DNA of 63,767 bases, filler included, from Octopus bimaculoides (taxonomy: Eukaryota), in NCBI RefSeq assembly GCF_001194135.2. It is 10 parts of 9 records of this genome, joined end to end, with 100 filler letters (N's around TTAATTAATTAA, not from the genome) between each part and the next. Parts side by side here need not be neighbours in the genome. Positions count along the whole stretch, not along the records: positions 18,475 to 26,360 come from NC_069010.1; 9 more parts are not named here. One strand, 5' to 3'. The translations under genes and the position numbers were made by a program. A model generated the notes under the pieces. The model searched no databases and was not told the DNA's origin. It worked only from the letters and a program-made list of their open reading frames with translations. Shown here piece by piece: positions 11,855 through 26,460 of this stretch (the first letter of the stretch is position 1; the number at the start of each line of letters is the position of its first letter).

Positions 11855-12900
11855 CCATATATCGCCATATATCGCCATATATATAATCCTGCAAATTTAT
11901 TATCTTCCGATAATTTTAAAATTCGATTACAAATGGAGGCTTTACTTGTTCTTGGACACAGACATCTTACCAACATCCACTACAAATCAACAAACAATGC
12001 TTACTAGGTAGATTCCACTAAGTGAACATTTAGACGTATGTGCAGCAAGCAAATCACCAAAATTCCTAAATTTCCCACTTTATCTTTGCTCTGACAAAAC
12101 CACAGATCAAATACGTATAAATGACCTATGTTTACGCGCCACAAATAAATAAACTATAAAACAGATATAATCACTATCAACTTCATCAAGACATTACACT
12201 ATTGTAATTCACACACAATCGCATAGACAACTATATACATGCATGCATACAGATATATAACATATTGACACACGTATACAAGCTAGGAACCTATTTCCTA
12301 CTCTTTTCTCTTTTTGAAACCTATTGTTCATATTGAAACAGTCTTGACATTTGGCGCAATTACTGTCCAAAACCAAGTGGCCTAATATGCGACCGCAATA
12401 CACAGCTGCTATTCATATTGCTTCATGTCACATTCACTGCAATAACACAACTTTAAATTTTGTTGCAATTATCGTTCATAGAGTCACATGACCCCGATAT
12501 ACAGACGTCACCGAGAACTAAGCAACTTCTATGCCAGACCTGGTGACCATCTTCAACCAGTCGAATGTGTCTTTACTTATTGCAATTTGAGCCATAGACT
12601 CTCCATAAATTGGGCAACATTTTCAACCTCTGATCAGAGGGGAGACAAATGCGGCTGTGATTTAGGTCCTTCTGTTTTACATCTCTTTTGTAATTGAAGA
12701 AGTCTTGACGCCGGTAAAGTAAATAAAAATAAATATTCTTAATAACTCCAGAAGTATTTTCGACTCATTTCTTTATACTCGCACAAGCGTGGAAAAACTT
12801 AGTTTCTCACACACGCTCGCATGTGTGTGTACGTATTCGTGTATGTCTATGTATGTGTGTGTGTGCGAATTATGTACATACATATATACACATATATATG

Positions 12901-16189: not shown

Positions 16190-17112
16190 NNNNNNNNNNN
16201 NNNNNNNNNNNNNNNNNNNNNNNNNNNNNNNNNNNNNNNNNNNNNNNNNNNNNNNNNNNNNNNNNNNNNNNNNNNNNNNNNNNNNNNNNNNNNNNNNNNN
16301 NNNNNNNNNNNNNNNNNNNNNNNNNNNNNNNNNNNNNNNNNNNNNNNNNNNNNNNNNNNNNNNNNNNNNNNNNNNNNNNNNNNNNNNNNNNNNNNNNNNN
16401 NNNNNNNNNNNNNNNNNNNNNNNNNNNNNNNNNNNNNNNNNNNNNNNNNNNNNNNNNNNNNNNNNNNNNNNNNNNNNNNNNNNNNNNNNNNNNNNNNNNN
16501 NNNNNNNNTATATATATATATATATATATTACACTGACTGGATATATGAGATATATGCAGAGTAAAGCATGAAATAAAAGCGGTGGACAAGAGAAGCATT
16601 AATAAATAAGTATGGAATCATTAAATAGGTAATACGGGGAAATGTACGATAAAAAAAGACAAGATTCTTTCCGGAATCATAAGGACACATTAGGCTAGTT
16701 ACTTGAATTCCATGTCGCATATATTCTGCTCTGGACGGGACACCAGTCCGTCGAAGGATTACTCATTTTTGACAGCTGAATAGACTGGTGCAACATAAAA
16801 TGAAGTATATTTTCTTAAGATAACAAAGAATCGCCAGGAATCGAACACACGATCTTATGAGCATGAGTGCAATATCATAAACATCAGGACATGCGTCTCC
16901 GCACAAATATACAACAACTGGTAAAATAAGTTGAAAATAGAAAAATAAAATTGTTAAGCTCTGTACCCCAGCATGACTACAGTCTAATGGCGGAGACAGA
17001 TAAAACAGTATATATTTACACCCCCCCCCTACACATATATATTATATAGAGAGATTGATTGATAGATATAGATATTTATACGTGTACTGAACGCACACTC
17101 ATGCACATACAT

Positions 17113-17149
<37 letters not shown>

Positions 17150-17415
17150 CATAAACACACGCAAACGCACCCACATGAACACAAGCATACACTCGCAGAT
17201 GCGTATATACAGCGGGCTTCTTTTAGTTTCCATCTACCAAGACCACTCACAAACTTTTGGTCTGCTCGAGGCTATAGTAGAAGGTAAGTATGTGGTTGGG
17301 AATCAAGCTTCTTACCAGACAGTCACGTCTGCGTCTATAGAGTACATCTTGTGCGTTCAAATACATGTACGAATGCTACTACTATGCTTAATGTCTCCAT
17401 AGATCATCATGTTCC

Positions 17416-17616
17416 ACTGTGCTTCCAGTAGAGTGATTAAGTAATTAATTTACTTGGTATTATTACTAGTTATAAAATACAGAGCAAATGTAGAAAAAAT
17501 GAAGTTAAACACGAGTTCATTTTTTCCTACATTTGCTCTGTATTTTATAACTAGTAATAATACCAAGTAAATTAATTACTTAATCACTCTACTGGAAGCA
17601 CAGTTAAACACGAGTT
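17416..17616. repeat. Near-perfect 88-bp inverted duplication with duplicated spacer
   Basis: Arm 17416-17503 vs 17516-17604 differ by one 1-nt indel; GTTAAACACGAGTT occurs at 17504-17517 and again at 17603-17616. Confidence 0.95.
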
Positions 17617-18268: not shown

Positions 18269-18858
18269 TAATCCCTTTTGATCGACACACCGCTATTTTT
18301 CTTTTTCCTTCCCCCTCCCAAAAAGAAAAGCTCTACATTGTATCTGTCCCATCTTTGTTGAGCCCTGTGTGGCTNNNNNNNNNNNNNNNNNNNNNNNNNN
18401 NNNNNNNNNNNNNNNNNNTTAATTAATTAANNNNNNNNNNNNNNNNNNNNNNNNNNNNNNNNNNNNNNNNNNNNATATATATGTAGATTTGTAATGGCTG
18501 TTCGTCGGAGGAGAGGAATTTCACAAGAGATACACGGAAAGAAGCACTTTCTCTCTCTCTCTCTCTCTCTCTCACAGACACAGACACACAGACACATGTA
18601 CATGCATGCATCCTCCCATCAGAGATATTTTAAGAAATGTTAATTTGTTACACCCTACGCTTCTCTCTGTCTCTATCGTGTTTTCTTGTCAAGGAACAAT
18701 CAGAAAGAGAGAACGACAAAGAGCTTGAGAGAGAGGTGTAGTGAGAGATAGAGATAGCGATAGAGAGAGAGAGGTAAGGGGGGGGCTCAGTGAAACGGGG
18801 AGACACATTGCTTGGTAGACAAACAGATGAGCATAAGCAATCATATAGTGCTCACGCC

Positions 18859-18868
18859 ATGGTGTTCA
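18859..18868 (+). CDS. Candidate first coding exon (M-V-F + 1 nt) of the orphan gene
   Basis: GCCATGG Kozak context, GTAAGT donor at 18869, and phase 1 matching the CCACCAG acceptor before 22090; a TCAGT Inr-like motif lies at ~18786. Speculative. Confidence 0.3.
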
Positions 18869-18959
18869 GTAAGTAAAAAGACATTCCTTATGCTAATTAA
18901 TTTTAAGTTTTATTGATATTTGTGATAGGAATTTTATCAATCAGTTTATTGATTTTATT

Positions 18960-19120
18960 TGTTGGTGCGGTAAGGAGCTTGCTTCCCAAAGCACATGGTT
19001 CTGGGTTCAGTTCCCCTGTGTGGCACCTTGGGCAGGCAAATGTCTTCAAAACATAGCCTCGGGCTGACCAAAGCCTTGTGAGTGGATTTGGTAGACGGAA
19101 ACTGAAAGAAGCTTGTTCTA
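18960..19120 (+). mobile_element. tRNA-derived SINE (family D)
   Basis: GGTAAGGAGCTTGCTTCC...GGGTTCAGTTCC...GAGTGGATTTGGTAGACGGAAACTGAAAGAAGC. Related copies near 5155, 7600, 17200, 20070, 26170, 46300 and 61050. Confidence 0.85.
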
Positions 19121-22089
19121 TATGTTTGTGTGTGAGTGTTATTGTCTTCTTGCCTATACTTTATGTAATGGTTGTAAAGAAGTGTCACCATTGTGAAAAT
19201 GGGGTAATTTTGCCTTTCTTTGTAATAGTCGAAGGTTGGTGCCAAAGAAGGTTGTCTCCCTGTAGATAAAGTACCTCAACACATTCCATCTGACCCCTAT
19301 AACCATACNNNNNNNNNNNNNNNNNNNNNNNNNNNNNNNNNNNNNNNNNNNNNNNNNNNNNNNNNNNNNNNNNNNNNNNNNNNNNNNNNNNNNNNNNNNN
19401 NNNNNNNNNNNNNNNNNNNNNNNNNNNNNNNNNNNNNNNNNNNNNNNNNNNNNNNNNNNNNNNNNNNNNNNNNNNNNNNNNNNNNNNNNNNNNNNNNNNN
19501 NNNNNNNNNNNNNNNNNNNNNNNNNNNNNNNNNNNNNNNNNNNNNNNNNNNNNNNNNNNNNNNNNNNNNNNNNNNNNNNNNNNNNNNNNNNNNNNNNNNN
19601 NNNNNNNNNNNNNNNNNNNNNNNNNNNNNNNNNNNNNNNNNNNNNNNNNNNNNNNNNNNNNNNNNNNNNNNNNNNNNNNNNNNNNNNNNNNNNNNNNNNN
19701 NNNNNNNNNNNNNNNNNNNNNNNNNNNNNNNNNNNNNNNNNNNNNNNNNNNNNNNNNNNNNNNNNNNNNNNNNNNNNNNNNNNNNNNNNNNNNNNNNNNN
19801 NNNNNNNNNNNNNNNNNNNNNNNNNNNNNNNNNNNNNNNNNNNNNNNNNNNNNNNNNNNNNNNNNNNNNNNNNNNNNNNNNNNNNNNNNNNNNNNNNNNN
19901 NNNNNNNNNNNNNNNNNNNNNNNNNNNNNNNNNNNNNNNNNNNNNNNNNNNNNNNNNNNNNNNNNNNNNNNNNNNNNNNNNNNNNNNNNNNNNNNNNNNN
20001 NNNNNNNNNNNNNNNNNNNNNNNNNNNNNNNNNNNNNNNNNNNNNNNNNNNNNNNNNNTATATATATATACATGGTTTCAGGTTCAGTTCCACCTCAGGC
20101 AAGTGTCTTCTACTATGGAGACAGGGGTTAACCAAAGTGAGATGGAAACTGAAAGAAGCTTGTTCTATATGTTTGTGTGTGAGTGTTATTGTCTTCTTGC
20201 CTATACTTTATGTAATGGTTGTAAAGAAGTGTCACCATTGTGAAAATGGGGTAATTTTGCCTTTCTTTGTAATAGTCGAAGGTTGGTGCCAAAGAAGGTT
20301 GTCTCCCTGTAGATAAAGTACCTCAACACATTCCATCTGACCCCTATAACCATACAAAACAATGATGGTGATGATGATTAAGATATACATTCCTACATGT
20401 GTTTATATGTATGTCATCATCATCATCATCCTTAAATATTCACATTTCGTGCTGGTATAGGCTAGATGGTTTGGGAGAAGCTAGCAAGCCAGAAGACTGG
20501 TTTGGTTTGATTTTCGTGGCTGGATGCCCTTCCTTGTACCAACCACTTTACAGAGTGTACTGGATTCTTTTTACATAGCACCAGCACCAGTGAGGTCACC
20601 AAGTGACTTGTAAAGCAAGGCCCTTCGACTGAGATGGAGAGTAGTATTGGAGGGGAGGTGGTTTTCTTGCCCAGTGATAAGAAGATAAAGTATAACAGAG
20701 GGATGAGTATAATGGAGGCTGTCTTGCAGCAGAGGAGAGACATGGCTACTCCAGTTAGAAAGAAAGAGAGAGAGATGTGTTGAGTGTACCTTCAAGCTTT
20801 AGAGAGGGTACACTAAAGGAGTTCCGACGCAAAAACGTATATAATTAAATGAATGTATTTATCTTCTTCAATATATATTTCAGTATAAAGAATTCATTAA
20901 GAGACTTAATAAATCAAAATTTCTTTACACATCTTCAGGAAAAATAAATTATTAATATAACCAAAAGGATCGATTCTTGAAGAGTCTACATACCTTCACT
21001 GTTTTTTTTTTCTGCTATTTTGGTGATTATTTTTGTTGGTAGATAATTTATAATATATTGATATATACACACACACACACANNNNNNNNNNNNNNNNNNN
21101 NNNNNNNNNNNNNNNNNNNNNNNNNNNNNNNNNNNNNNNNNNNNNNNNNNNNNNNNNNNNNNNNNNNNNNNNNNNNNNNNNNNNNNNNNNNNNNNNNNNN
21201 NNNNNNNNNNNNNNNNNNNNNNNNNNNNNNNNNNNNNNNNNNNNNNNNNNNNNNNNNNNNNNNNNNNNNNNNNNNNNNNNNNNNNNNNNNNNNNNNNNNN
21301 NNNNNNNNNNNNNNNNNNNNNNNNNNNNNNNNNNNNNNNNNNNNNNNNNNNNNNNNNNNNNNNNNNNNNNNNNNNNNNNNNNNNNNNNNNNNNNNNNNNN
21401 NNNNNNNNNNNNNNNNNNNNNNNNNNNNNNNNNNNNNNNNNNNNNNNNNNNNNNNNNNNNNNNNNNNNNNNNNNNNNNNNNNNNNNNNNNNNNNNNNNNN
21501 NNNNNNNNNNNNNNNNNNNNNNNNNNNNNNNNNNNNNNNNNNNNNNNNNNNNNNNNNNNNNNNNNNNNNNNNNNNNNNNNNNNNNNNNNNNNNNNNNNNN
21601 NNNNNNNNNNNNNNNNNNNNNNNNNNNNNNNNNNNNNNNNNNNNNNNNNNNNNNNNNNNNNNNNNNNNNNNNNNNNNNNNNNNNNNNNNNNNNNNNNNNN
21701 NNNNNNNNNNNNNNNNNNNNNNNNNNNNNNNNNNNNNNNNNNNNNNNNNNNNNNNNNNNNNNNNNNNNNNNNNNNNNNNNNNNNNNNNNNNNNNNNNNNN
21801 NNNNNNNNNNNNNNNNNNNNNNNNNNNNNNNNNNNNNNNNNNNNNNNNNNNNNNNNNNNNNNNNNNNNNNNNNNNNNNNNNCGTCTCCATATGTGTTCCA
21901 TTTTTCACGTGAACCTCAAGACAAGAAAGAATACAATTGTCGGCCAACTTCAATTTATATTATAGATATATATATATATATATATACATACATAGATATA
22001 TTTATATTAATTTCATTCTTTTCTTTTCAAAAAAAAATTCCCTAAACAAAATGGTCATAAACAACAACCAATTCTTCTTCTGCCACCAG

Positions 22090-22442
22090 TTATAATTCAG
22101 TGCTCCCTACAAGCTCAGAGCAATGCAAAGCCAAAGCCAAAGCCAAAATCTAAATCTGGGAAACCTGGAAATTCAGAACCAGAAAAGCCTACAAAGAAAG
22201 ATCATGGGGCCGAATCTCCAAAGAAACCAGAAGCTATCACACAACCTCGTGCTAATTTTCTATTGATGGCACTGGATTGGTTAAAGAACAATGTAGTCAT
22301 CTCTGACGATACTATGAAGAAGACCTGGAATACGTTTACCGATATTCTTAAGGAAGATAAAATAATGCAAAATGACAACTGGCAACAACAACTAATATTT
22401 CTTATTTCGCAGAATGCTCACCTTACTGATTTTGTTCACAAT
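22090..22442 (+). CDS. Orphan gene exon A (Lys/Pro-rich linker plus helical-looking domain)
   Basis: Frame open from 22011 to the GTAAGT donor at 22443 (phase 0): IIQCSLQAQSNAKPKPKPKSKSGKPGNSEPEKPTKKDHGAESPKKPEAITQPRANFLLMALDWLKNNVV...HLTDFVHN. The 5' boundary is uncertain (AG at 22088-89 or 22099-100). Confidence 0.7.
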
Positions 22443-22479
22443 GTAAGTATCACTATACTCTACACTCTCACTCTATTGC

Positions 22480-22957
22480 CTACACTCAACCTCCCACTCC
22501 ACTTAACCCCCCACTCCTCTTGACCTCCCGCTCCACTCAGCTTCACACTCCATTCAACCTCACTCACCTCACAGTGCACCCAACCCACACTTCACTCGGT
22601 CCCACACTCTGCTCGATCCCGCACTCCACTTGGCTCCCCCACTCCGTTCGGTCCCACATGCCACTCGATCCTACACTCAACTCGATCCTGCACTCCTCTC
22701 AGTCCCACACTCCACTCTATCCCTATACTCAACTCGATCCCGCACTCCATTCAGTCCCATACTCCACTTGACCCACACACNNNNNNNNNNCGTTCGGTCC
22801 CACATGCCACTCGATCCTACACTCAACTCGATCCTGCACTCCTCTCAGTCCCACACTCCACTCTATCCCTATACTCAACTCGATCCCGCACTCCATTCAG
22901 TCCCATACTCCACTTGACCCACACACTCCACCCTAACCCTAACCCTAACCCTAACCC
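22480..22957. repeat. C-rich minisatellite ending in (CCCTAA)4
   Basis: CCCACACTC/ACTCGATCC variant units; four telomere-type hexamers at 22931-22954. Confidence 0.85.
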
Positions 22958-23134
22958 AACATTCCACTCAACCTGTGTCACACTGAATCTCCCCGAGAAC
23001 TACGTTAAGAGTACAAGTGTCTGTGGAGTGCTCGGCCACTTGCATGTTAATTTTATGAGTAGGCTGTTCCATTGATCGGATCAACTGGATCACTTGTCGC
23101 CATGACCAACATCGTGAGAGTCAGCACCAGTGTT

Positions 23135-23565
23135 AGTTACACATCAACATTTCAGCTGGTATACCCTCCAGCCTTCATCAGGTGTCTTGTGGAAATTTCG
23201 AACCTGGGTTCTCATTCCTGAGGTATTTTTCGACGTTATTATTATTATTCAGGTCACTACCTGGAATCGAACTCATAATCTTGGAGTTAGTAGCTTGCGC
23301 TCTTAACCACTACGCCATATGCCCATGGGCATAGTGGTTAAGAGCATAGGCTACTAACCCCAAGATTCCGAGTTCGAATCTAGGCAGTGACCTGAATAAT
23401 AATAATTATAATAATAACAACAACATCGAAAAATACCCTAGGAATGAGAACCCACGTCCGAAATTTCCCCAAGACACCTGATGAAGGCTGGAGGGTATAT
23501 CAGCCGAAATGTTGCGTTAACAACAAACAAGATGAGGACAAATATCCGTCAATTGTAAATAATGT
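23135..23565. mobile_element. Head-to-head palindromic tRNA-headed SINE pair with hammerhead-like 3' parts
   Basis: Centre TATGCCCATGGGCATA (23318-23333). Each arm has an A box (TAGTGGTTAAGAGC), a B box (GAGTTCGAWTC), an (AAT)n tract, then CTGATGA-A-GGCTG..CAGCY-GAAA. Confidence 0.85.
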
Positions 23566-23676
23566 ATATATAAACTATATTTTCTATACACTCTGCTGTC
23601 CTTCACACTATGTATAAATATACTATGTTTTCTCTATGCTCTGCTATTCTGTACCCTCTTATTCTATATACCCTAG

Positions 23677-23833
23677 CTAAACAAGATGCTACATATCTAC
23701 CCTTGGTTGTTCAATGGATTAGCAATGAACCTACCTAACTACACAGTTGAACATTTCAAGCACTGGTTACATATGTCTACATCACAACTACCCTACCTGG
23801 GTTACCAGCCAGGACATGGATTGCAGCACCCTT
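23677..23833 (+). CDS. Orphan gene exon B
   Basis: Pyrimidine tract plus TAG acceptor and GTAAGT donor; phase 0 to 1; LNKMLHIYPWLFNGLAMNLPNYTVEHFKHWLHMSTSQLPYLGYQPGHGLQHP. Confidence 0.75.
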
Positions 23834-23994
23834 GTAAGTATCTACACCAGCGGTTCTCAATATTAGGGCTACCAACCCTTAAGGGGAGCATTAGGTATGT
23901 TAAAGAGGGCATTAGGCTTGAGTAGGGAATTAAAGGAACAGTGAGGTAATATAATTAATATTACTAAATTTTACCTGTTATAGTAAGTATACTC

Positions 23995-24380
23995 TCACTC
24001 GATACTCAACACTCTCACTTGACACTCAGCATTCATTTGACATTCAACACTCTCACTCAACACTCAGCCTTCATTTGACATTCAACACTCTCACTCAACA
24101 CTATATTTTCAATTTACACTCAACATTCTCACTTGACACTCAACACTCATTTCACAGTCAACACTCACTTGACATTCAACACTCTCACTCAACACTCAGC
24201 NNNNNNNNNNTTTGACATTCAACACTCTCACTCAACACTCAGCCTTCATTTGACATTCAACACTCTCACTCAACACTATATTTTCAATTTACACTCAACA
24301 TTCTCACTTGACACTCAACACTCATTTCACAGTCAACACTCACCTGACATTCAACACTCTCACTCAACACCCTCACTTCA
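23995..24380. repeat. CAACACTCTCACT-type minisatellite
   Basis: Direct reading; partly duplicated across a 10-N gap. Confidence 0.85.
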
Positions 24381-24553
24381 CACAATAACAGCCTTGACTA
24401 AACTACTTTAAAACAAACCAAAACAACCTTGGACAGTGAGGATTCTGTCTCCTGGGTCACTGACCAATAATGTTATTGGTCACTGACTCTCTCCTTGACT
24501 CTGTTATATACATGCCATCTCTGTATCTCTCTCTCTCTCTCTTTCTGTTGCAG

Positions 24554-24652
24554 ACCACCCTGGAGTATACAACCAAATGTACCAGATGCCACACAACTAC
24601 AAAATGTCTCCACATCTCTTCCACCAGAGTACCCATCACTTGAATCCAGGAA
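24554..24652 (+). CDS. Orphan gene exon C (His/Tyr/Pro/Gln-rich)
   Basis: (CT)n TTTCTGTTGCAG acceptor and GTATGT donor; 99 nt, phase 1 to 1; (Y)HPGVYNQMYQMPHNYKMSPHLFHQSTHHLNPG. Confidence 0.75.
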
Positions 24653-24795
24653 GTATGTGTAACAGTATCTATTGAGAGGGGGGATGCATGTGGCTTAGGG
24701 TCAAGGGTGTTGCATTCATGATCACAAGGTTGCGGTTTCAATTCCTGGATCAAGCAATACATTGTTTTCTTGAGAAAAAACACTTCATTTCACTA

Positions 24796-25374
24796 AAGAT
24801 TATTTGCCAACATAACATGACAGTCCTGTTTTAGGATTAATGTTGCTGTAATTTAGTCCCAGGAGACACCATCTCCAGCTGGCTATGCCAGGGGTTTTCA
24901 AACTTTTTGACTTGCGGACCCCTTTATAGTTCAGGTTTTACCTTAGGGACCCCCTTATAAACGCTTATGAAATTTATACATAAATATTTGCTTAAAATAA
25001 CATATATTTTTACATTTATTTATTTAACAGTATTTAACAAAATAGGTTTATTGTCAATTAAAAGATTTCGATTAAAAAAACATATATAAAATCAAATTGC
25101 CCATAAAAAGTATTTGCTGTCCATGGGCCCCCTGTCTTGTCCTTGCGGACCCCCTGTGGTCTGCGGACCACAGTTTGAAACCCCTGGGCTATGCGACANN
25201 NNNNNNNNNNNNNNNNNNNNNNNNNNNNNNNNNNNNNNNNNNNNNNNNNNNNNNNNNNNNNNNNNNNNNNNNNNNNNNNNNNNNNNNNNNNNNNNNNNNN
25301 NNGTCTCCTGGGGCTAAATTACAGCAACATTCGTCCTAAACCAGGACTGCCATGTTATGTTGGCAAACAATCTT
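24796..25374. mobile_element. TA-flanked MITE with long (~75 bp) terminal inverted repeats
   Basis: AAGATTATTTGCCAACATAACATG...CCCAGGAGAC is mirrored at 25303-25374; TA on both flanks. Confidence 0.75.
24889..25186. mobile_element. hAT-type MITE nested in the previous element
   Basis: TIRs CAGGGGTTTTCAAACT / AGTTTGAAACCCCTG; exact 8-bp target-site duplication GGCTATGC (24881-88 and 25187-94). Confidence 0.92.
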
Positions 25375-25544
25375 TACTACAAAGTACTGTTGCTGAATGT
25401 CTCACGTTGTGAGATTTAGAAAACAGTAGTTTTCTGCTTCATTTCACTGATGTAGAAAATAGCTGTCCCACTGAATAAAAAATCTAATGTCTGCAATCGA
25501 GGCAGTATTTAATTCAAAATAATTATCTATGCCTCATCAGATGT

Positions 25545-25775
25545 CATCATTCATTGTTATCATCACCACCACCAGCACCACCACCACCACCAGCATCATC
25601 ATCATAATTATAACCATCAGCATCAACATCGCCATGATTATAACCATCATCATTAAAATCAACTTTGTAATCATTACCACCACCATCATCATCATCGTCA
25701 TCATCATCGTTGTCATCATCATCGTTGTCATCATCATCATCCTCATCAAGCTCCTCCTCATCACCATCATCATTG
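25545..25775. repeat. Degenerate (CAT/CAC)n trinucleotide tract
   Basis: Direct reading. Confidence 0.9.
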
Positions 25776-25918
25776 TCTTTTCCCCACATTTTCCCATTTA
25801 CATTCCTTAATTGCCACTGTTAACGATATAATTTCTAAATTAAAGATTAATTCATAATGAAACTAATAACACTCACTTAACATCTCTCTCTCTCTCTCTC
25901 TTTTCTCTCTTTCACAAG

Positions 25919-26085
25919 TGACCAACAGTGGCTTCTCCAACATCAACGGCTGCCCAGTGGTCAATGTGACCTTTAACCTCCAAATCAATAGCAAAGGTCA
26001 CTGTTGGACCTCAGTAACAGCCCCACAGCAAAGTCTAAAGAATTTCTTCATTTTGGCCGCTTACCAAAACAAATGCTTCAAGTAA
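25919..26085 (+). CDS. Orphan gene exon D (probable terminal coding exon)
   Basis: (CT)n...TTTCACAAG acceptor; the phase-1 join gives (M)TNSGFSNINGCPVVNVTFNLQINSKGHCWTSVTAPQQSLKNFFILAAYQNKCFK*. TAA at 26083-85 overlaps a GTAAGT at 26082. Confidence 0.72.
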
Positions 26086-26460
26086 GTGAATGTTGTTGTT
26101 GTTTGACCTCCTCACACCAGATCACACCTGGTCAAGTAGATCTAGGATTGAAAGCGTTCCAGATATAACCATCCACATGGTTCCAGGTTCAGTCCTACCA
26201 CAACATGGGACTGAACCCCAAGCCACACCAACTCCAAAACTGTATATTATATATATATATATATATATATGAGTGGATTTGGTAGACAGAAACTGAAAGA
26301 AGTCCATTGTATATATACATACATACATACATATATATATATGTATATATATATATATATNNNNNNNNNNNNNNNNNNNNNNNNNNNNNNNNNNNNNNNN
26401 NNNNTTAATTAATTAANNNNNNNNNNNNNNNNNNNNNNNNNNNNNNNNNNNNNNNNNNNN

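What the first reader, a model, noticed from the sequence alone, without database searches (positions are those of the whole stretch)
22090..26085. Unannotated four-exon orphan gene with exact splice-phase continuity
Four segments have canonical splice signals (22090-22442, 23677-23833, 24554-24652, 25919-26085). Their phases (0, 1, 1) chain into one stop-free frame, with split codons T+AC=Tyr and A+TG=Met. The protein has a Lys/Pro-rich linker, an amphipathic Trp-containing block, a His/Tyr/Pro/Gln/Met low-complexity block, and a C-terminal region with three Cys. I recognise no family, so it is a candidate lineage-restricted gene. The ORF track misses it as a unit.
Basis: partly seen in the sequence, partly recalled or inferred. 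Interest (0 to 1): 0.82.

Follow-up and report, generated by a model that had tools for sequence, protein, structure and literature searches.

The report
Annotated octopus gene, four middle exons
The four segments are real, correctly spliced coding exons, but they are the middle of an already annotated Octopus bimaculoides gene (LOC106881805) for a secreted protein whose tail resembles the vitamin-B12-binding beta domain of transcobalamin, so this is neither an unannotated nor a complete orphan gene.

Summary
The four segments have AG/GT splice signals and chain in phases 0, 1, 1 into one stop-free frame of 257 codons.

- **Already annotated.** The translation is 100% identical over its full length to RefSeq XP_014787807.1, "uncharacterized protein LOC106881805" of Octopus bimaculoides.
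- **Conserved.** The same exons, splice sites and phases occur in O. vulgaris and Argonauta hians. Against O. vulgaris, dN/dS is 0.17 and differences by codon position are 21/16/57.
- **Incomplete at both ends.**
  - A start exon lies at 18859-18868.
  - A 45-nt signal-peptide exon, present in O. vulgaris, is missing here and is probably hidden in the N gap at 21082-21881.
  - The "stop" TAA (26083-26085) is part of the donor AA|GTAAGT. Orthologues splice on to two further exons that lie beyond the piece.
- **Gaps.** All three assembly gaps named in the finding are intronic.
- **Family.**
  - Exons 1-3 have no detectable family outside octopods.
  - Exon 4 begins a ~120-aa C-terminal domain that is remotely homologous to the beta domain (DUF4430) of transcobalamin, intrinsic factor and haptocorrin. 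hhalign gives 96% probability, and the top 11 Foldseek PDB hits are all these proteins.
  - There is no alpha domain.
- **Function.** A role as a secreted corrinoid or small-ligand binder is inferred, not shown.

Interest is modest.

The parts
18859..18868 (+). Coding part of the first coding exon: ATGGTGTTCA followed by the donor gtaagt. It ends in phase 1.
   Evidence: Gives the MVF(I) N-terminus of XP_014787807.1. The O. vulgaris counterpart is ATGATGTTCA|gtaagt at L001 10001-10010. The surrounding 467 nt are colinear with L001 at 73% identity.
21082..21881 (.). 800-N assembly gap. It is the probable hiding place of the 45-nt signal-peptide exon (inferred).
   Evidence: O. vulgaris has this exon (MRRLFFAWIVLS, ag|ATATTCAAATG...GTCAG|gtgagt) at L001 13241-13285, between its first coding exon and exon 1. 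No counterpart exists in the read bases of the piece. L001 12819-14298 has no aligned partner in the piece. Because the exon is 45 nt long, the Gnomon model that skips it stays in frame.
22090..22442 (+). It encodes the end of the signal peptide (IIQCSLQA), a Lys/Pro-rich segment and the first predicted helices.
   Evidence: ccag|TT...AAT|gtaagt. The O. vulgaris counterpart at L001 14418-14773 keeps both sites and differs by one 3-nt indel; dN/dS is 0.14. The frame is also open in Argonauta, with an in-frame Asn/Ser-rich expansion.
23677..23833 (+). It encodes helical sequence and the start of the His/Tyr/Pro-rich segment.
   Evidence: ctag|CT...CCTT|gtaagt. The whole exon is open and 88% identical at the protein level in O. 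vulgaris (L001 16041-16197; dN/dS 0.21), although that species' model uses only its last 16 codons. It is present in full in Argonauta.
24554..24652 (+). It encodes the His/Tyr/Pro/Gln/Met-rich linker.
   Evidence: gcag|AC...GGAA|gtatgt. Counterparts are L001 17678-17776 and Argonauta L003 about 12002-12100, with the same phases.
25919..26081 (+). Exon 4 as corrected (163 nt, phase 1 in, phase 2 out). It encodes the first half of the transcobalamin-beta-like domain, including the invariant NVT sequon and three conserved Cys.
   Evidence: caag|TG...TTCAA|gtaagt. The counterpart is L001 19079-19241; dN/dS is 0.11. The family alignment is. hhalign and Foldseek link the domain to the TC/IF/HC beta domain.
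26082..26087 (+). Splice donor GTAAGT.
   Evidence: The O. vulgaris, Argonauta and Logan-transcript proteins all continue past ...KCF with a conserved ~80-aa sequence. In Argonauta the same site is TTCAG|gtgaga, which also gives an immediate stop if read through. The O. vulgaris downstream exons are L001 20287-20438 and 21947-22041. The piece ends at about L001 19600, before them.
22781..22790 (.). 10-N gap in intron 1.
   Evidence: 22791-22926 is an exact copy of 22645-22780, which ends at the gap. This is an unmerged overlap inside a 17/52-nt C-rich minisatellite.
24201..24210 (.). 10-N gap in intron 2.
   Evidence: It lies inside a 38-nt minisatellite. The 133 nt after the gap repeat 24036-24168.
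25199..25302 (.). 104-N gap in intron 3.
   Evidence: It is enclosed by 89-nt inverted repeats at 24779-24867 and 25303-25391. Intron length is close to that of O. vulgaris (1266 against 1302 nt).

Best explanation
The four segments are internal coding exons of the already annotated O. bimaculoides gene LOC106881805. This is an octopod gene of at least eight exons, cut off in this piece by assembly gaps upstream and by the piece's edge downstream.

**The protein, in order:**
- a signal peptide (shown in O. vulgaris; in O. bimaculoides the exon is inferred to lie in the N gap at 21082-21881);
- a disordered Lys/Pro-rich stretch;
- about 100 residues of predicted helices;
- a His/Tyr/Pro/Gln/Met-rich flexible linker;
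- a C-terminal domain of about 120 residues, remotely homologous to the beta domain (DUF4430) of the cobalamin carriers transcobalamin, intrinsic factor and haptocorrin.

Exon 4 in the window encodes the first half of that domain.

**Likely mechanism (inferred, about 25% likely).** The secreted, probably N-glycosylated protein binds a corrinoid or similar small ligand with its beta-like domain alone. The isolated transcobalamin beta domain does this.
For: **Gene and exons**
- 100% identity and coverage to XP_014787807.1.
- Splice sites and phases confirmed.
- O. vulgaris is colinear and keeps all sites and the open frame.
- dN/dS is 0.17 (p = 3e-13), and differences fall mainly on third codon positions (21/16/57).
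- Argonauta keeps the same junction phases for exons 1-6.

**Signal peptide**
- The O. vulgaris exon encodes MRRLFFAWIVLS, joined to VIIQCSLQA. The hydrophobic core has a Kyte-Doolittle mean of 2.8.
- The distant homologue P0004 also starts with a signal-like sequence.
- An NVT sequon is invariant across the family.

**True C-terminus**
- The Argonauta and Logan proteins share the O. vulgaris continuation.
- The Logan contig is an uninterrupted ORF on a 1.5-kb contig ending in an Illumina adapter, so it looks like a transcript.

**Beta-domain homology**
- Intrinsic factor is one of only 3 PDB hits of the family profile, aligned at its C-terminus, but at E = 1.
- hhalign gives 94% probability against IF residues 328-391.
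- hhalign gives 96.2% probability over 81 columns against an IF/HC/TC beta-domain alignment.
- That score is 55.6; 200 column shuffles give a mean of 11.2, SD 2.3 and maximum 20.6.
- The top 11 Foldseek PDB hits are all TC, IF or HC. The best is E = 3e-4. The isolated TC beta domain 5no0 has TM 0.55 normalised to the target. The next hit drops to E = 5e-2.
- In the hhalign alignment, the family's invariant Tyr (GEY) falls at the position of Tyr362 of TC/HC, a corrinoid-contacting bulky residue (PMC4350170).

**Precedent**
- The isolated TC beta domain retains cobalamin (PMC5599065).
- Short DUF4430-only Tcn-like proteins exist in teleosts (PMC4350170).
Against: - No RNA evidence for O. bimaculoides was available here.
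- Direct Pfam scans of all four family proteins give no DUF4430 hit even at E <= 10.
- Both AlphaFold models are of low confidence (mean pLDDT 35-36), so the Foldseek result must be read with care.
- The PDB profile hit alone is not significant (E = 1).
- The alpha domain, which supplies half of the cobalamin pocket in TC/IF/HC, is absent.
- The signal exon has not been seen in O. bimaculoides.
- The O. bimaculoides Gnomon model has a different C-terminus.
- Exons are no more conserved at the nucleotide level than the alignable intron flanks (0.896 against 0.900).
Confidence: 0.85

Rival explanations
1. One reading: a complete, self-contained four-exon orphan gene whose protein ends ...QNKCFK at the TAA of 26083-26085.
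For: The TAA is in frame and conserved in O. vulgaris. The two species' annotated models disagree about what follows.
Against: - There is no ATG at the start. 22090 follows an acceptor and enters in phase 1.
- The upstream exons are conserved.
- The TAA is part of the donor consensus AA|GTAAGT. Argonauta has AG|GTGAGA there.
- Three homologues share a conserved ~80-aa continuation that completes the beta-like domain.
Confidence: 0.05
2. The RefSeq model is right for O. bimaculoides: after 26081 the transcript splices to a species-specific terminal exon (NCCRCFALLPEV...DKPQEG), and the beta-like domain is truncated in this species.
For: XP_014787807.1 has this C-terminus. Residues 279-314 have a 64%-identical counterpart in O. 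vulgaris at L001 22693-22800, about 650 nt beyond that gene's stop.
Against: - That sequence is absent from the Argonauta and Logan proteins and would cut a conserved domain in half.
- The same model also skips the signal exon, which shows it was built across gaps.
- The O. bimaculoides DNA downstream of 26360 was not available, so this could not be tested directly.
Confidence: 0.08
3. The C-terminal domain only resembles the transcobalamin beta domain. The protein is an octopod-specific secreted protein with another role (matrix or structural, signalling, or binding of another ligand), and the His/Tyr/Pro/Met-rich region is the functional part.
For: - There is no alpha domain.
- Pfam does not recognise the domain.
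- The models are of low confidence.
- The N-terminal two thirds evolve fast and carry low-complexity expansions.
- There are three conserved Cys, an odd number.
Against: The profile-profile score lies far outside the shuffle controls. Foldseek independently returns only cobalamin carriers at the top. The Tyr362-equivalent residue is invariant. None of this shows function.
Confidence: 0.55
4. There is no gene: the open frame and splice signals arose by chance, or this is a decaying pseudogene.
For: No transcript evidence for this species was available. Exon and intron nucleotide identity are the same.
Against: The frame and all splice sites are kept in three octopod species. dN/dS is 0.17, and differences fall mainly on third positions. 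There is only one 3-nt length difference in 771 nt of coding sequence, against 26 non-multiple-of-3 gap events in 1088 nt of intron.
Confidence: 0.02

Closest known systems
XP_014787807.1, uncharacterized protein LOC106881805 (Octopus bimaculoides, RefSeq Gnomon model)
   Different: The model adds MVF+I from 18859-18868, skips the signal-peptide exon, and splices at 26081 into a C-terminus that no orthologue shares.
Octopus vulgaris hypothetical protein (P0002, on OX597843.1) and Argonauta hians GAB1599631.1 (P0003)
   Same: Both are orthologues with the same exon positions and phases. O. vulgaris is about 86% identical over the four exons once exon 2 is read in full.
   Different: The O. vulgaris model under-calls exon 2, using an AG created by a CAA>CAG change. 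The Argonauta entry is partial (it starts in exon 2), and that species' genomic exon 1 carries a ~110-codon Asn/Ser/Asp-rich expansion.
Beta domain of transcobalamin, intrinsic factor and haptocorrin (Pfam PF14478, DUF4430; e.g. PDB 5no0, 2pmv, 4kki)
   Same: The C-terminal ~120 residues align with it. Shared motifs include FKF-ETT, S-INNIAE against S-NGI-ET, the conserved Trp, and the Y/F-x-P...IT..F tail. hhalign gives 96% probability. These proteins fill the top Foldseek ranks. The predicted strand and helix order (beta-beta-alpha, then five to six strands) is compatible with that fold.
   Different: Identity is only about 23%. There is no Pfam hit. Three conserved Cys and an NVT sequon are specific to this family. 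Cobalamin binding is untested.
Short DUF4430-only Tcn-like proteins of teleosts (described in PMC4350170)
   Same: They are secreted-type proteins that carry the beta domain without the alpha6/alpha6 barrel.
   Different: No direct sequence comparison was made here. The octopod proteins have an unrelated ~200-residue N-terminal part with helices and a low-complexity linker.
Logan RNA-seq transcript protein P0004 (SRR27666077, organism unknown)
   Same: It has the same layout: signal peptide, helical part, Pro/Tyr/His/Met-rich low-complexity stretch, and a homologous C-terminal domain (37% identity to the O. vulgaris domain).
   Different: Its N-terminal two thirds show no detectable sequence similarity to the octopus protein.

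Membership tests
Spliced protein-coding gene (GT-AG introns) | Canonical acceptor and donor at every junction, with compatible phases | tested here: met
   The sites are conserved in O. vulgaris and Argonauta.
Spliced protein-coding gene (GT-AG introns) | Purifying selection in the proposed frame | tested here: met
   dN/dS is 0.17 (p = 3e-13). Differences by codon position are 21/16/57.
Spliced protein-coding gene (GT-AG introns) | Transcript evidence for the junctions in O. bimaculoides | not testable with these tools
   No octopus RNA-seq or EST data could be reached. Only a distant homologue has a transcript contig.
Taxonomically restricted (orphan) gene | No homologue outside the lineage over the whole protein | tested here: not met
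   Exons 1-3 have relatives only in Octopus and Argonauta. The C-terminal domain, however, has a distant homologue of unknown origin (P0004) and a remote relation to the TC/IF/HC beta domain.
Unannotated gene | Absent from public gene sets | tested here: not met
   XP_014787807.1 / LOC106881805 matches at 100% identity and coverage.
Eukaryotic cobalamin carriers (TC/IF/HC) | N-terminal alpha6/alpha6-barrel alpha domain (Pfam PF01122) | tested here: not met
   No Pfam hit. Foldseek alignments to full-length TC/IF cover only ~110 columns. The N-terminal profile finds no carrier in PDB.
Eukaryotic cobalamin carriers (TC/IF/HC) | C-terminal beta domain: homology by profile and fold | tested here: met
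   hhalign 96.2% probability over 81 columns; score 55.6 against a shuffle maximum of 20.6. The top 11 Foldseek hits are all TC/IF/HC. Caveat: the model's pLDDT is about 35.
Eukaryotic cobalamin carriers (TC/IF/HC) | Pfam PF14478 (DUF4430) match above the gathering score | tested here: not met
   No hit at E <= 10 for P0001-P0004.
Eukaryotic cobalamin carriers (TC/IF/HC) | Bulky beta-domain residue at the Trp359/Tyr362 positions that contacts the corrinoid | tested here: inconclusive
   In the hhalign alignment the invariant Tyr of GEY falls at the Tyr362 position. Numbering follows PMC4350170 and the 4kki sequence. The mapping rests on a remote alignment.
Eukaryotic cobalamin carriers (TC/IF/HC) | Binds cobalamin | not testable with these tools
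   This needs a binding assay.
Secreted protein | N-terminal signal peptide | tested here: inconclusive
   Present in the O. vulgaris orthologue and in P0004, judged by sequence inspection and a hydrophobicity window. The O. bimaculoides exon was not found and is presumed to lie in the gap. No signal-peptide predictor was available.

The most novel reading that the evidence does not exclude
Octopods, and at least one other unidentified organism, make a secreted corrinoid carrier from a transcobalamin-like beta domain alone, fused to a lineage-specific helical and His/Tyr/Met-rich part. That would be a protostome vitamin-B12 binder that has gone unrecognised because Pfam does not detect the domain.
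Probability: 0.15. Interest if true: 0.55.

Novelty: new member of a known kind. Interest (0 to 1): 0.3.

Why it matters
**For the scan.** In gap-ridden assemblies a donor AA|GTAAGT can pass for a stop codon, and first and last exons can be missing.

**For annotation.** Both public models look flawed.
- The O. bimaculoides model lacks the signal exon and has a doubtful C-terminus.
- The O. vulgaris model lacks two thirds of exon 2.

**For biology.** The one mildly interesting point is a remote link between an uncharacterised octopod secreted protein and the cobalamin-binding beta domain. Cobalamin carriers outside vertebrates are poorly described, so a simple binding assay would be worth doing.

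Tried and rejected
- **Pfam on the 257-aa product and on P0001-P0004:** nothing apart from a sub-threshold DUF6263 hit (E = 0.07), rejected.
- **PDB sequence search with the mature protein:** nothing.
- **Word-indexed protein searches.** The first, with the 257-aa product, gave only the two Octopus proteins. The family domain profile found only P0003. P0004 found only itself.
- **Exhaustive profile search of 1.84 billion representatives:** four hits. One, P0005, is a 637-aa internally repetitive protein matched in 7 short stretches to the low-complexity linker; rejected as compositional.
- **Signal-peptide exon:** local DNA alignment and six-frame reading of the read bases of the piece did not find it.
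- **N-terminal part:** a profile (A5) against PDB gave only weak ribosomal L23a and C/EBP hits, rejected. BLASTP of the octopus against the Logan N-terminal parts showed no similarity.
- **Two AlphaFold runs:** both had mean pLDDT of about 35. Only the secondary-structure order and the Foldseek ranking were used.
- **tRNA and Rfam scans of the piece:** no tRNA. The only Rfam matches were far-sub-threshold miRNA-family hits on hairpin and TA repeats, rejected.
- **Literature:** no paper mentions LOC106881805 or SRR27666077.
- **Exact-sequence look-up of P0001:** not on record, so the O. bimaculoides DNA beyond 26360 could not be fetched.

Full report
**1. What is in the sequence**

The piece (18475-26360) is AT-rich animal DNA with microsatellites, SINE-like repeats and five N gaps.

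Read from 22092, they join into one stop-free frame of 257 codons. The junction phases are 0, 1 and 1, and the split codons are T+AC = Tyr and A+TG = Met.

**2. The gaps**

The three gaps inside the finding (22781-22790, 24201-24210, 25199-25302) all lie in the proposed introns, so they cannot break the frame.

- The 136 nt after the first gap are an exact copy of the 136 nt that end at the gap. This is an unmerged contig overlap inside a C-rich 17/52-nt minisatellite.
- The second gap lies in a 38-nt minisatellite.
- The third lies between 89-nt inverted repeats.

Order and orientation of the four exons are confirmed by colinearity with a chromosome-level O. vulgaris assembly (locus L001, OX597843.1). 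Its introns measure 1267, 1480 and 1302 nt, against 1234, 720 and 1266 nt here.

**3. It is annotated**

The spliced product is 100% identical over 100% of its length to XP_014787807.1, [quoted passage not shown] (316 aa). It is 73% identical to an O. vulgaris hypothetical protein of 321 aa. This identifies the organism and refutes "unannotated".

**4. It is a real coding gene**

In O. vulgaris the same four exons (L001 14418-14773, 16041-16197, 17678-17776, 19079-19245) keep every AG and GT. They differ in length by a single codon and stay open in the same frame, at about 86% amino-acid identity.

- Nei-Gojobori dN = 0.073, dS = 0.433, ratio 0.17.
- There are 51 synonymous and 43 non-synonymous differences over 155 and 616 sites (binomial p = 3e-13).
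- Differences by codon position are 21/16/57 (p = 1e-7).

Nucleotide identity alone does not separate exons from the alignable intron flanks (0.896 against 0.900). The introns, however, carry 26 gap events that are not multiples of three in 1088 nt.

In Argonauta hians (locus L003) the junction positions and phases of exons 1 to 6 are the same.

Exon 2 is coding over its whole length. It is open and 88% identical at the protein level in O. vulgaris, and present in Argonauta. The O. vulgaris model uses only its last 16 codons, via an AG created by a CAA>CAG change.

**5. It is not complete**

*Upstream.* 22090 follows an acceptor and enters in phase 1.
- The RefSeq model starts at ATGGTGTTCA|gtaagt (18859-18868). 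O. vulgaris has the same exon, ATGATGTTCA|gtaagt.
- Between it and exon 1, O. vulgaris has a 45-nt exon (L001 13241-13285) encoding ...MRRLFFAWIVLS. Joined to VIIQCSLQA at the start of exon 1, this forms a typical signal peptide: basic start, hydrophobic core with a Kyte-Doolittle mean of 2.8, and a polar end.
- That exon is not in the read bases of the piece.
- The O. vulgaris interval that contains it has no aligned partner here. Its expected place includes the 800-N gap at 21082-21881. I infer that the exon is hidden there.
- Because 45 is a multiple of three, the Gnomon model that skips it stays in frame.

- An exhaustive profile search of 1.84 billion representative proteins found only two more relatives. 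One is Argonauta hians GAB1599631.1 (partial). The other is a 385-aa protein from a Logan RNA-seq contig of an unknown organism.
- Both continue past ...CF with a sequence homologous to the O. vulgaris C-terminus: F.IETTRR...GEYV.S.NGI.ET...W....DL.LS.Y.P...I.
- In O. vulgaris this continuation is encoded by two further exons with good splice sites (L001 20287-20438 and 21947-22041).
- In Argonauta the homologous donor is TTCAG|gtgaga, which likewise gives an immediate stop if read through.
- The piece ends at about L001 19600, before these exons.
- The different C-terminus of the RefSeq model has no counterpart in the other family members. It maps about 650 nt beyond the O. vulgaris stop and is probably a prediction artefact. 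I could not fetch the O. bimaculoides DNA beyond 26360 to test this.

**6. What the protein is**

Direct searches give nothing (Pfam; PDB sequences).

The layout is: signal peptide; a Lys/Pro-rich segment; about 100 residues predicted as helices; a His/Tyr/Pro/Gln/Met-rich segment of about 50 residues; and a conserved C-terminal domain of about 120 residues with an invariant NVT sequon and three conserved Cys.

The motifs of this domain recalled the beta domain of intrinsic factor, so I tested that lead.

- A profile of the three domain sequences against all PDB sequences returned only three hits. Two were gastric intrinsic factor, aligned at its extreme C-terminus, but at E = 1.
- hhalign against that fragment gave 94% probability.
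- hhalign against an alignment of IF, haptocorrin and two transcobalamin beta domains gave 96.2% probability over 81 columns. Those sequences were taken from the PDB search output.
- The score was 55.6. Two hundred column shuffles of the template gave a mean of 11.2, SD 2.3 and maximum 20.6; the reversed template gave 10.2.
- The AlphaFold model is poor (pLDDT 35). Even so, its top 11 Foldseek PDB matches are all transcobalamin, intrinsic factor or haptocorrin. The best is E = 3e-4. The isolated TC beta domain 5no0 has TM 0.55 normalised to the target. The next hit drops to E = 5e-2.
- In the hhalign alignment, the family's invariant Tyr (GEY) falls at the position of Tyr362 of TC and haptocorrin, a bulky corrinoid-contacting residue (PMC4350170).

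I conclude, at about 80% confidence, that the C-terminal domain is a divergent member of the DUF4430 / cobalamin-carrier beta-domain superfamily. Exon 4 of the window encodes its first half.

The alpha domain of the carriers is absent. The N-terminal two thirds have no relatives outside octopods. Even the Logan protein, which has the same layout, shows no sequence similarity there.

**7. How it probably works**

*Shown:* a conserved, selectively constrained coding gene.

*Inferred:* secretion, N-glycosylation, and ligand binding by the beta-like domain.

The isolated transcobalamin beta domain holds cobalamin tightly enough to need extensive washing (PMC5599065). Beta-domain-only Tcn-like proteins exist in teleosts (PMC4350170). 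A beta-only corrinoid binder is therefore plausible, but I give it only about 25%. Another ligand or a structural role is at least as likely.

**8. Verdict**

The label is wrong: the gene is annotated, incomplete in this piece, and not wholly an orphan. Novelty lies only in the corrected gene model and the remote domain assignment. Interest is modest.

Noticed in passing
19097-19308 and 20144-20355, flanking the 750-N gap at 19309-20058: The 212 nt that end at the gap recur exactly after it. Overlapping stretches of both copies (19061-19167 and 20140-20214) map to one place in O. vulgaris (L001 12714-12818). The scaffold join is therefore probably redundant.
   Followed up: partly
22931-22954: A run of four CCCTAA units, an interstitial telomere-like repeat, lies at the end of the C-rich 17/52-nt minisatellite that fills much of intron 1.
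   Followed up: no
23145-23514: A large palindrome is made of two nested inverted-repeat pairs (105 nt at 90% and 79 nt at 87% complementarity). It contains tRNA-like (SINE-like) sequence and is conserved at 85% in O. vulgaris. ARAGORN finds no tRNA, and the only Rfam match is a far-sub-threshold MIR5380 hit.
   Followed up: partly
23960-24408: A 38-nt minisatellite in intron 2 has uncertain copy number across the 10-N gap. The array is about twice as long in O. vulgaris (L001 about 16900-17500).
   Followed up: no
24779-24867 and 25303-25391: 89-nt inverted repeats (87% complementary) enclose the 104-N gap, a MITE-like element in intron 3.
   Followed up: no
25529-25810: A degenerate (CAT/CAC)n tract in intron 3 yields spurious ORFs of 80-93 aa on both strands (Asp/Gly-rich, Ile/Thr-rich, Met-rich). 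None looks like a gene.
   Followed up: no
18965-19134 and 26270-26344: Sequence at these places (motif ...GAGTGGATTTGGTAGAC.GAAACTGAAAGAAG...) is one abundant repeat. It looks SINE-like by eye and matches many places in the 32-kb O. vulgaris locus on both strands.
   Followed up: no
L003 6417-6746 (Argonauta hians): Exon 1 of the Argonauta orthologue carries an in-frame Asn/Ser/Asp-rich trinucleotide expansion of about 110 codons. Gln/Gly-rich runs stand where Octopus has the Lys/Pro-rich linker.
   Followed up: no
Exons 22090-26081 compared with their intron flanks, against L001: Synonymous divergence (pS 0.33, dS 0.43) is three to four times the divergence of the alignable intron flanks (about 0.10). 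Overall exon identity is no higher than intron identity. Possible causes are alignment bias, transition bias (61 transitions to 33 transversions) and low-complexity sequence in exon 1. None was tested.
   Followed up: partly
L001 16149-16197 and L001 22693-22800: The O. vulgaris model omits the first 108 nt of exon 2 although they are open and conserved. The doubtful C-terminal exon of the O. bimaculoides RefSeq model has a 64%-identical counterpart about 650 nt beyond the O. vulgaris stop codon.
   Followed up: partly
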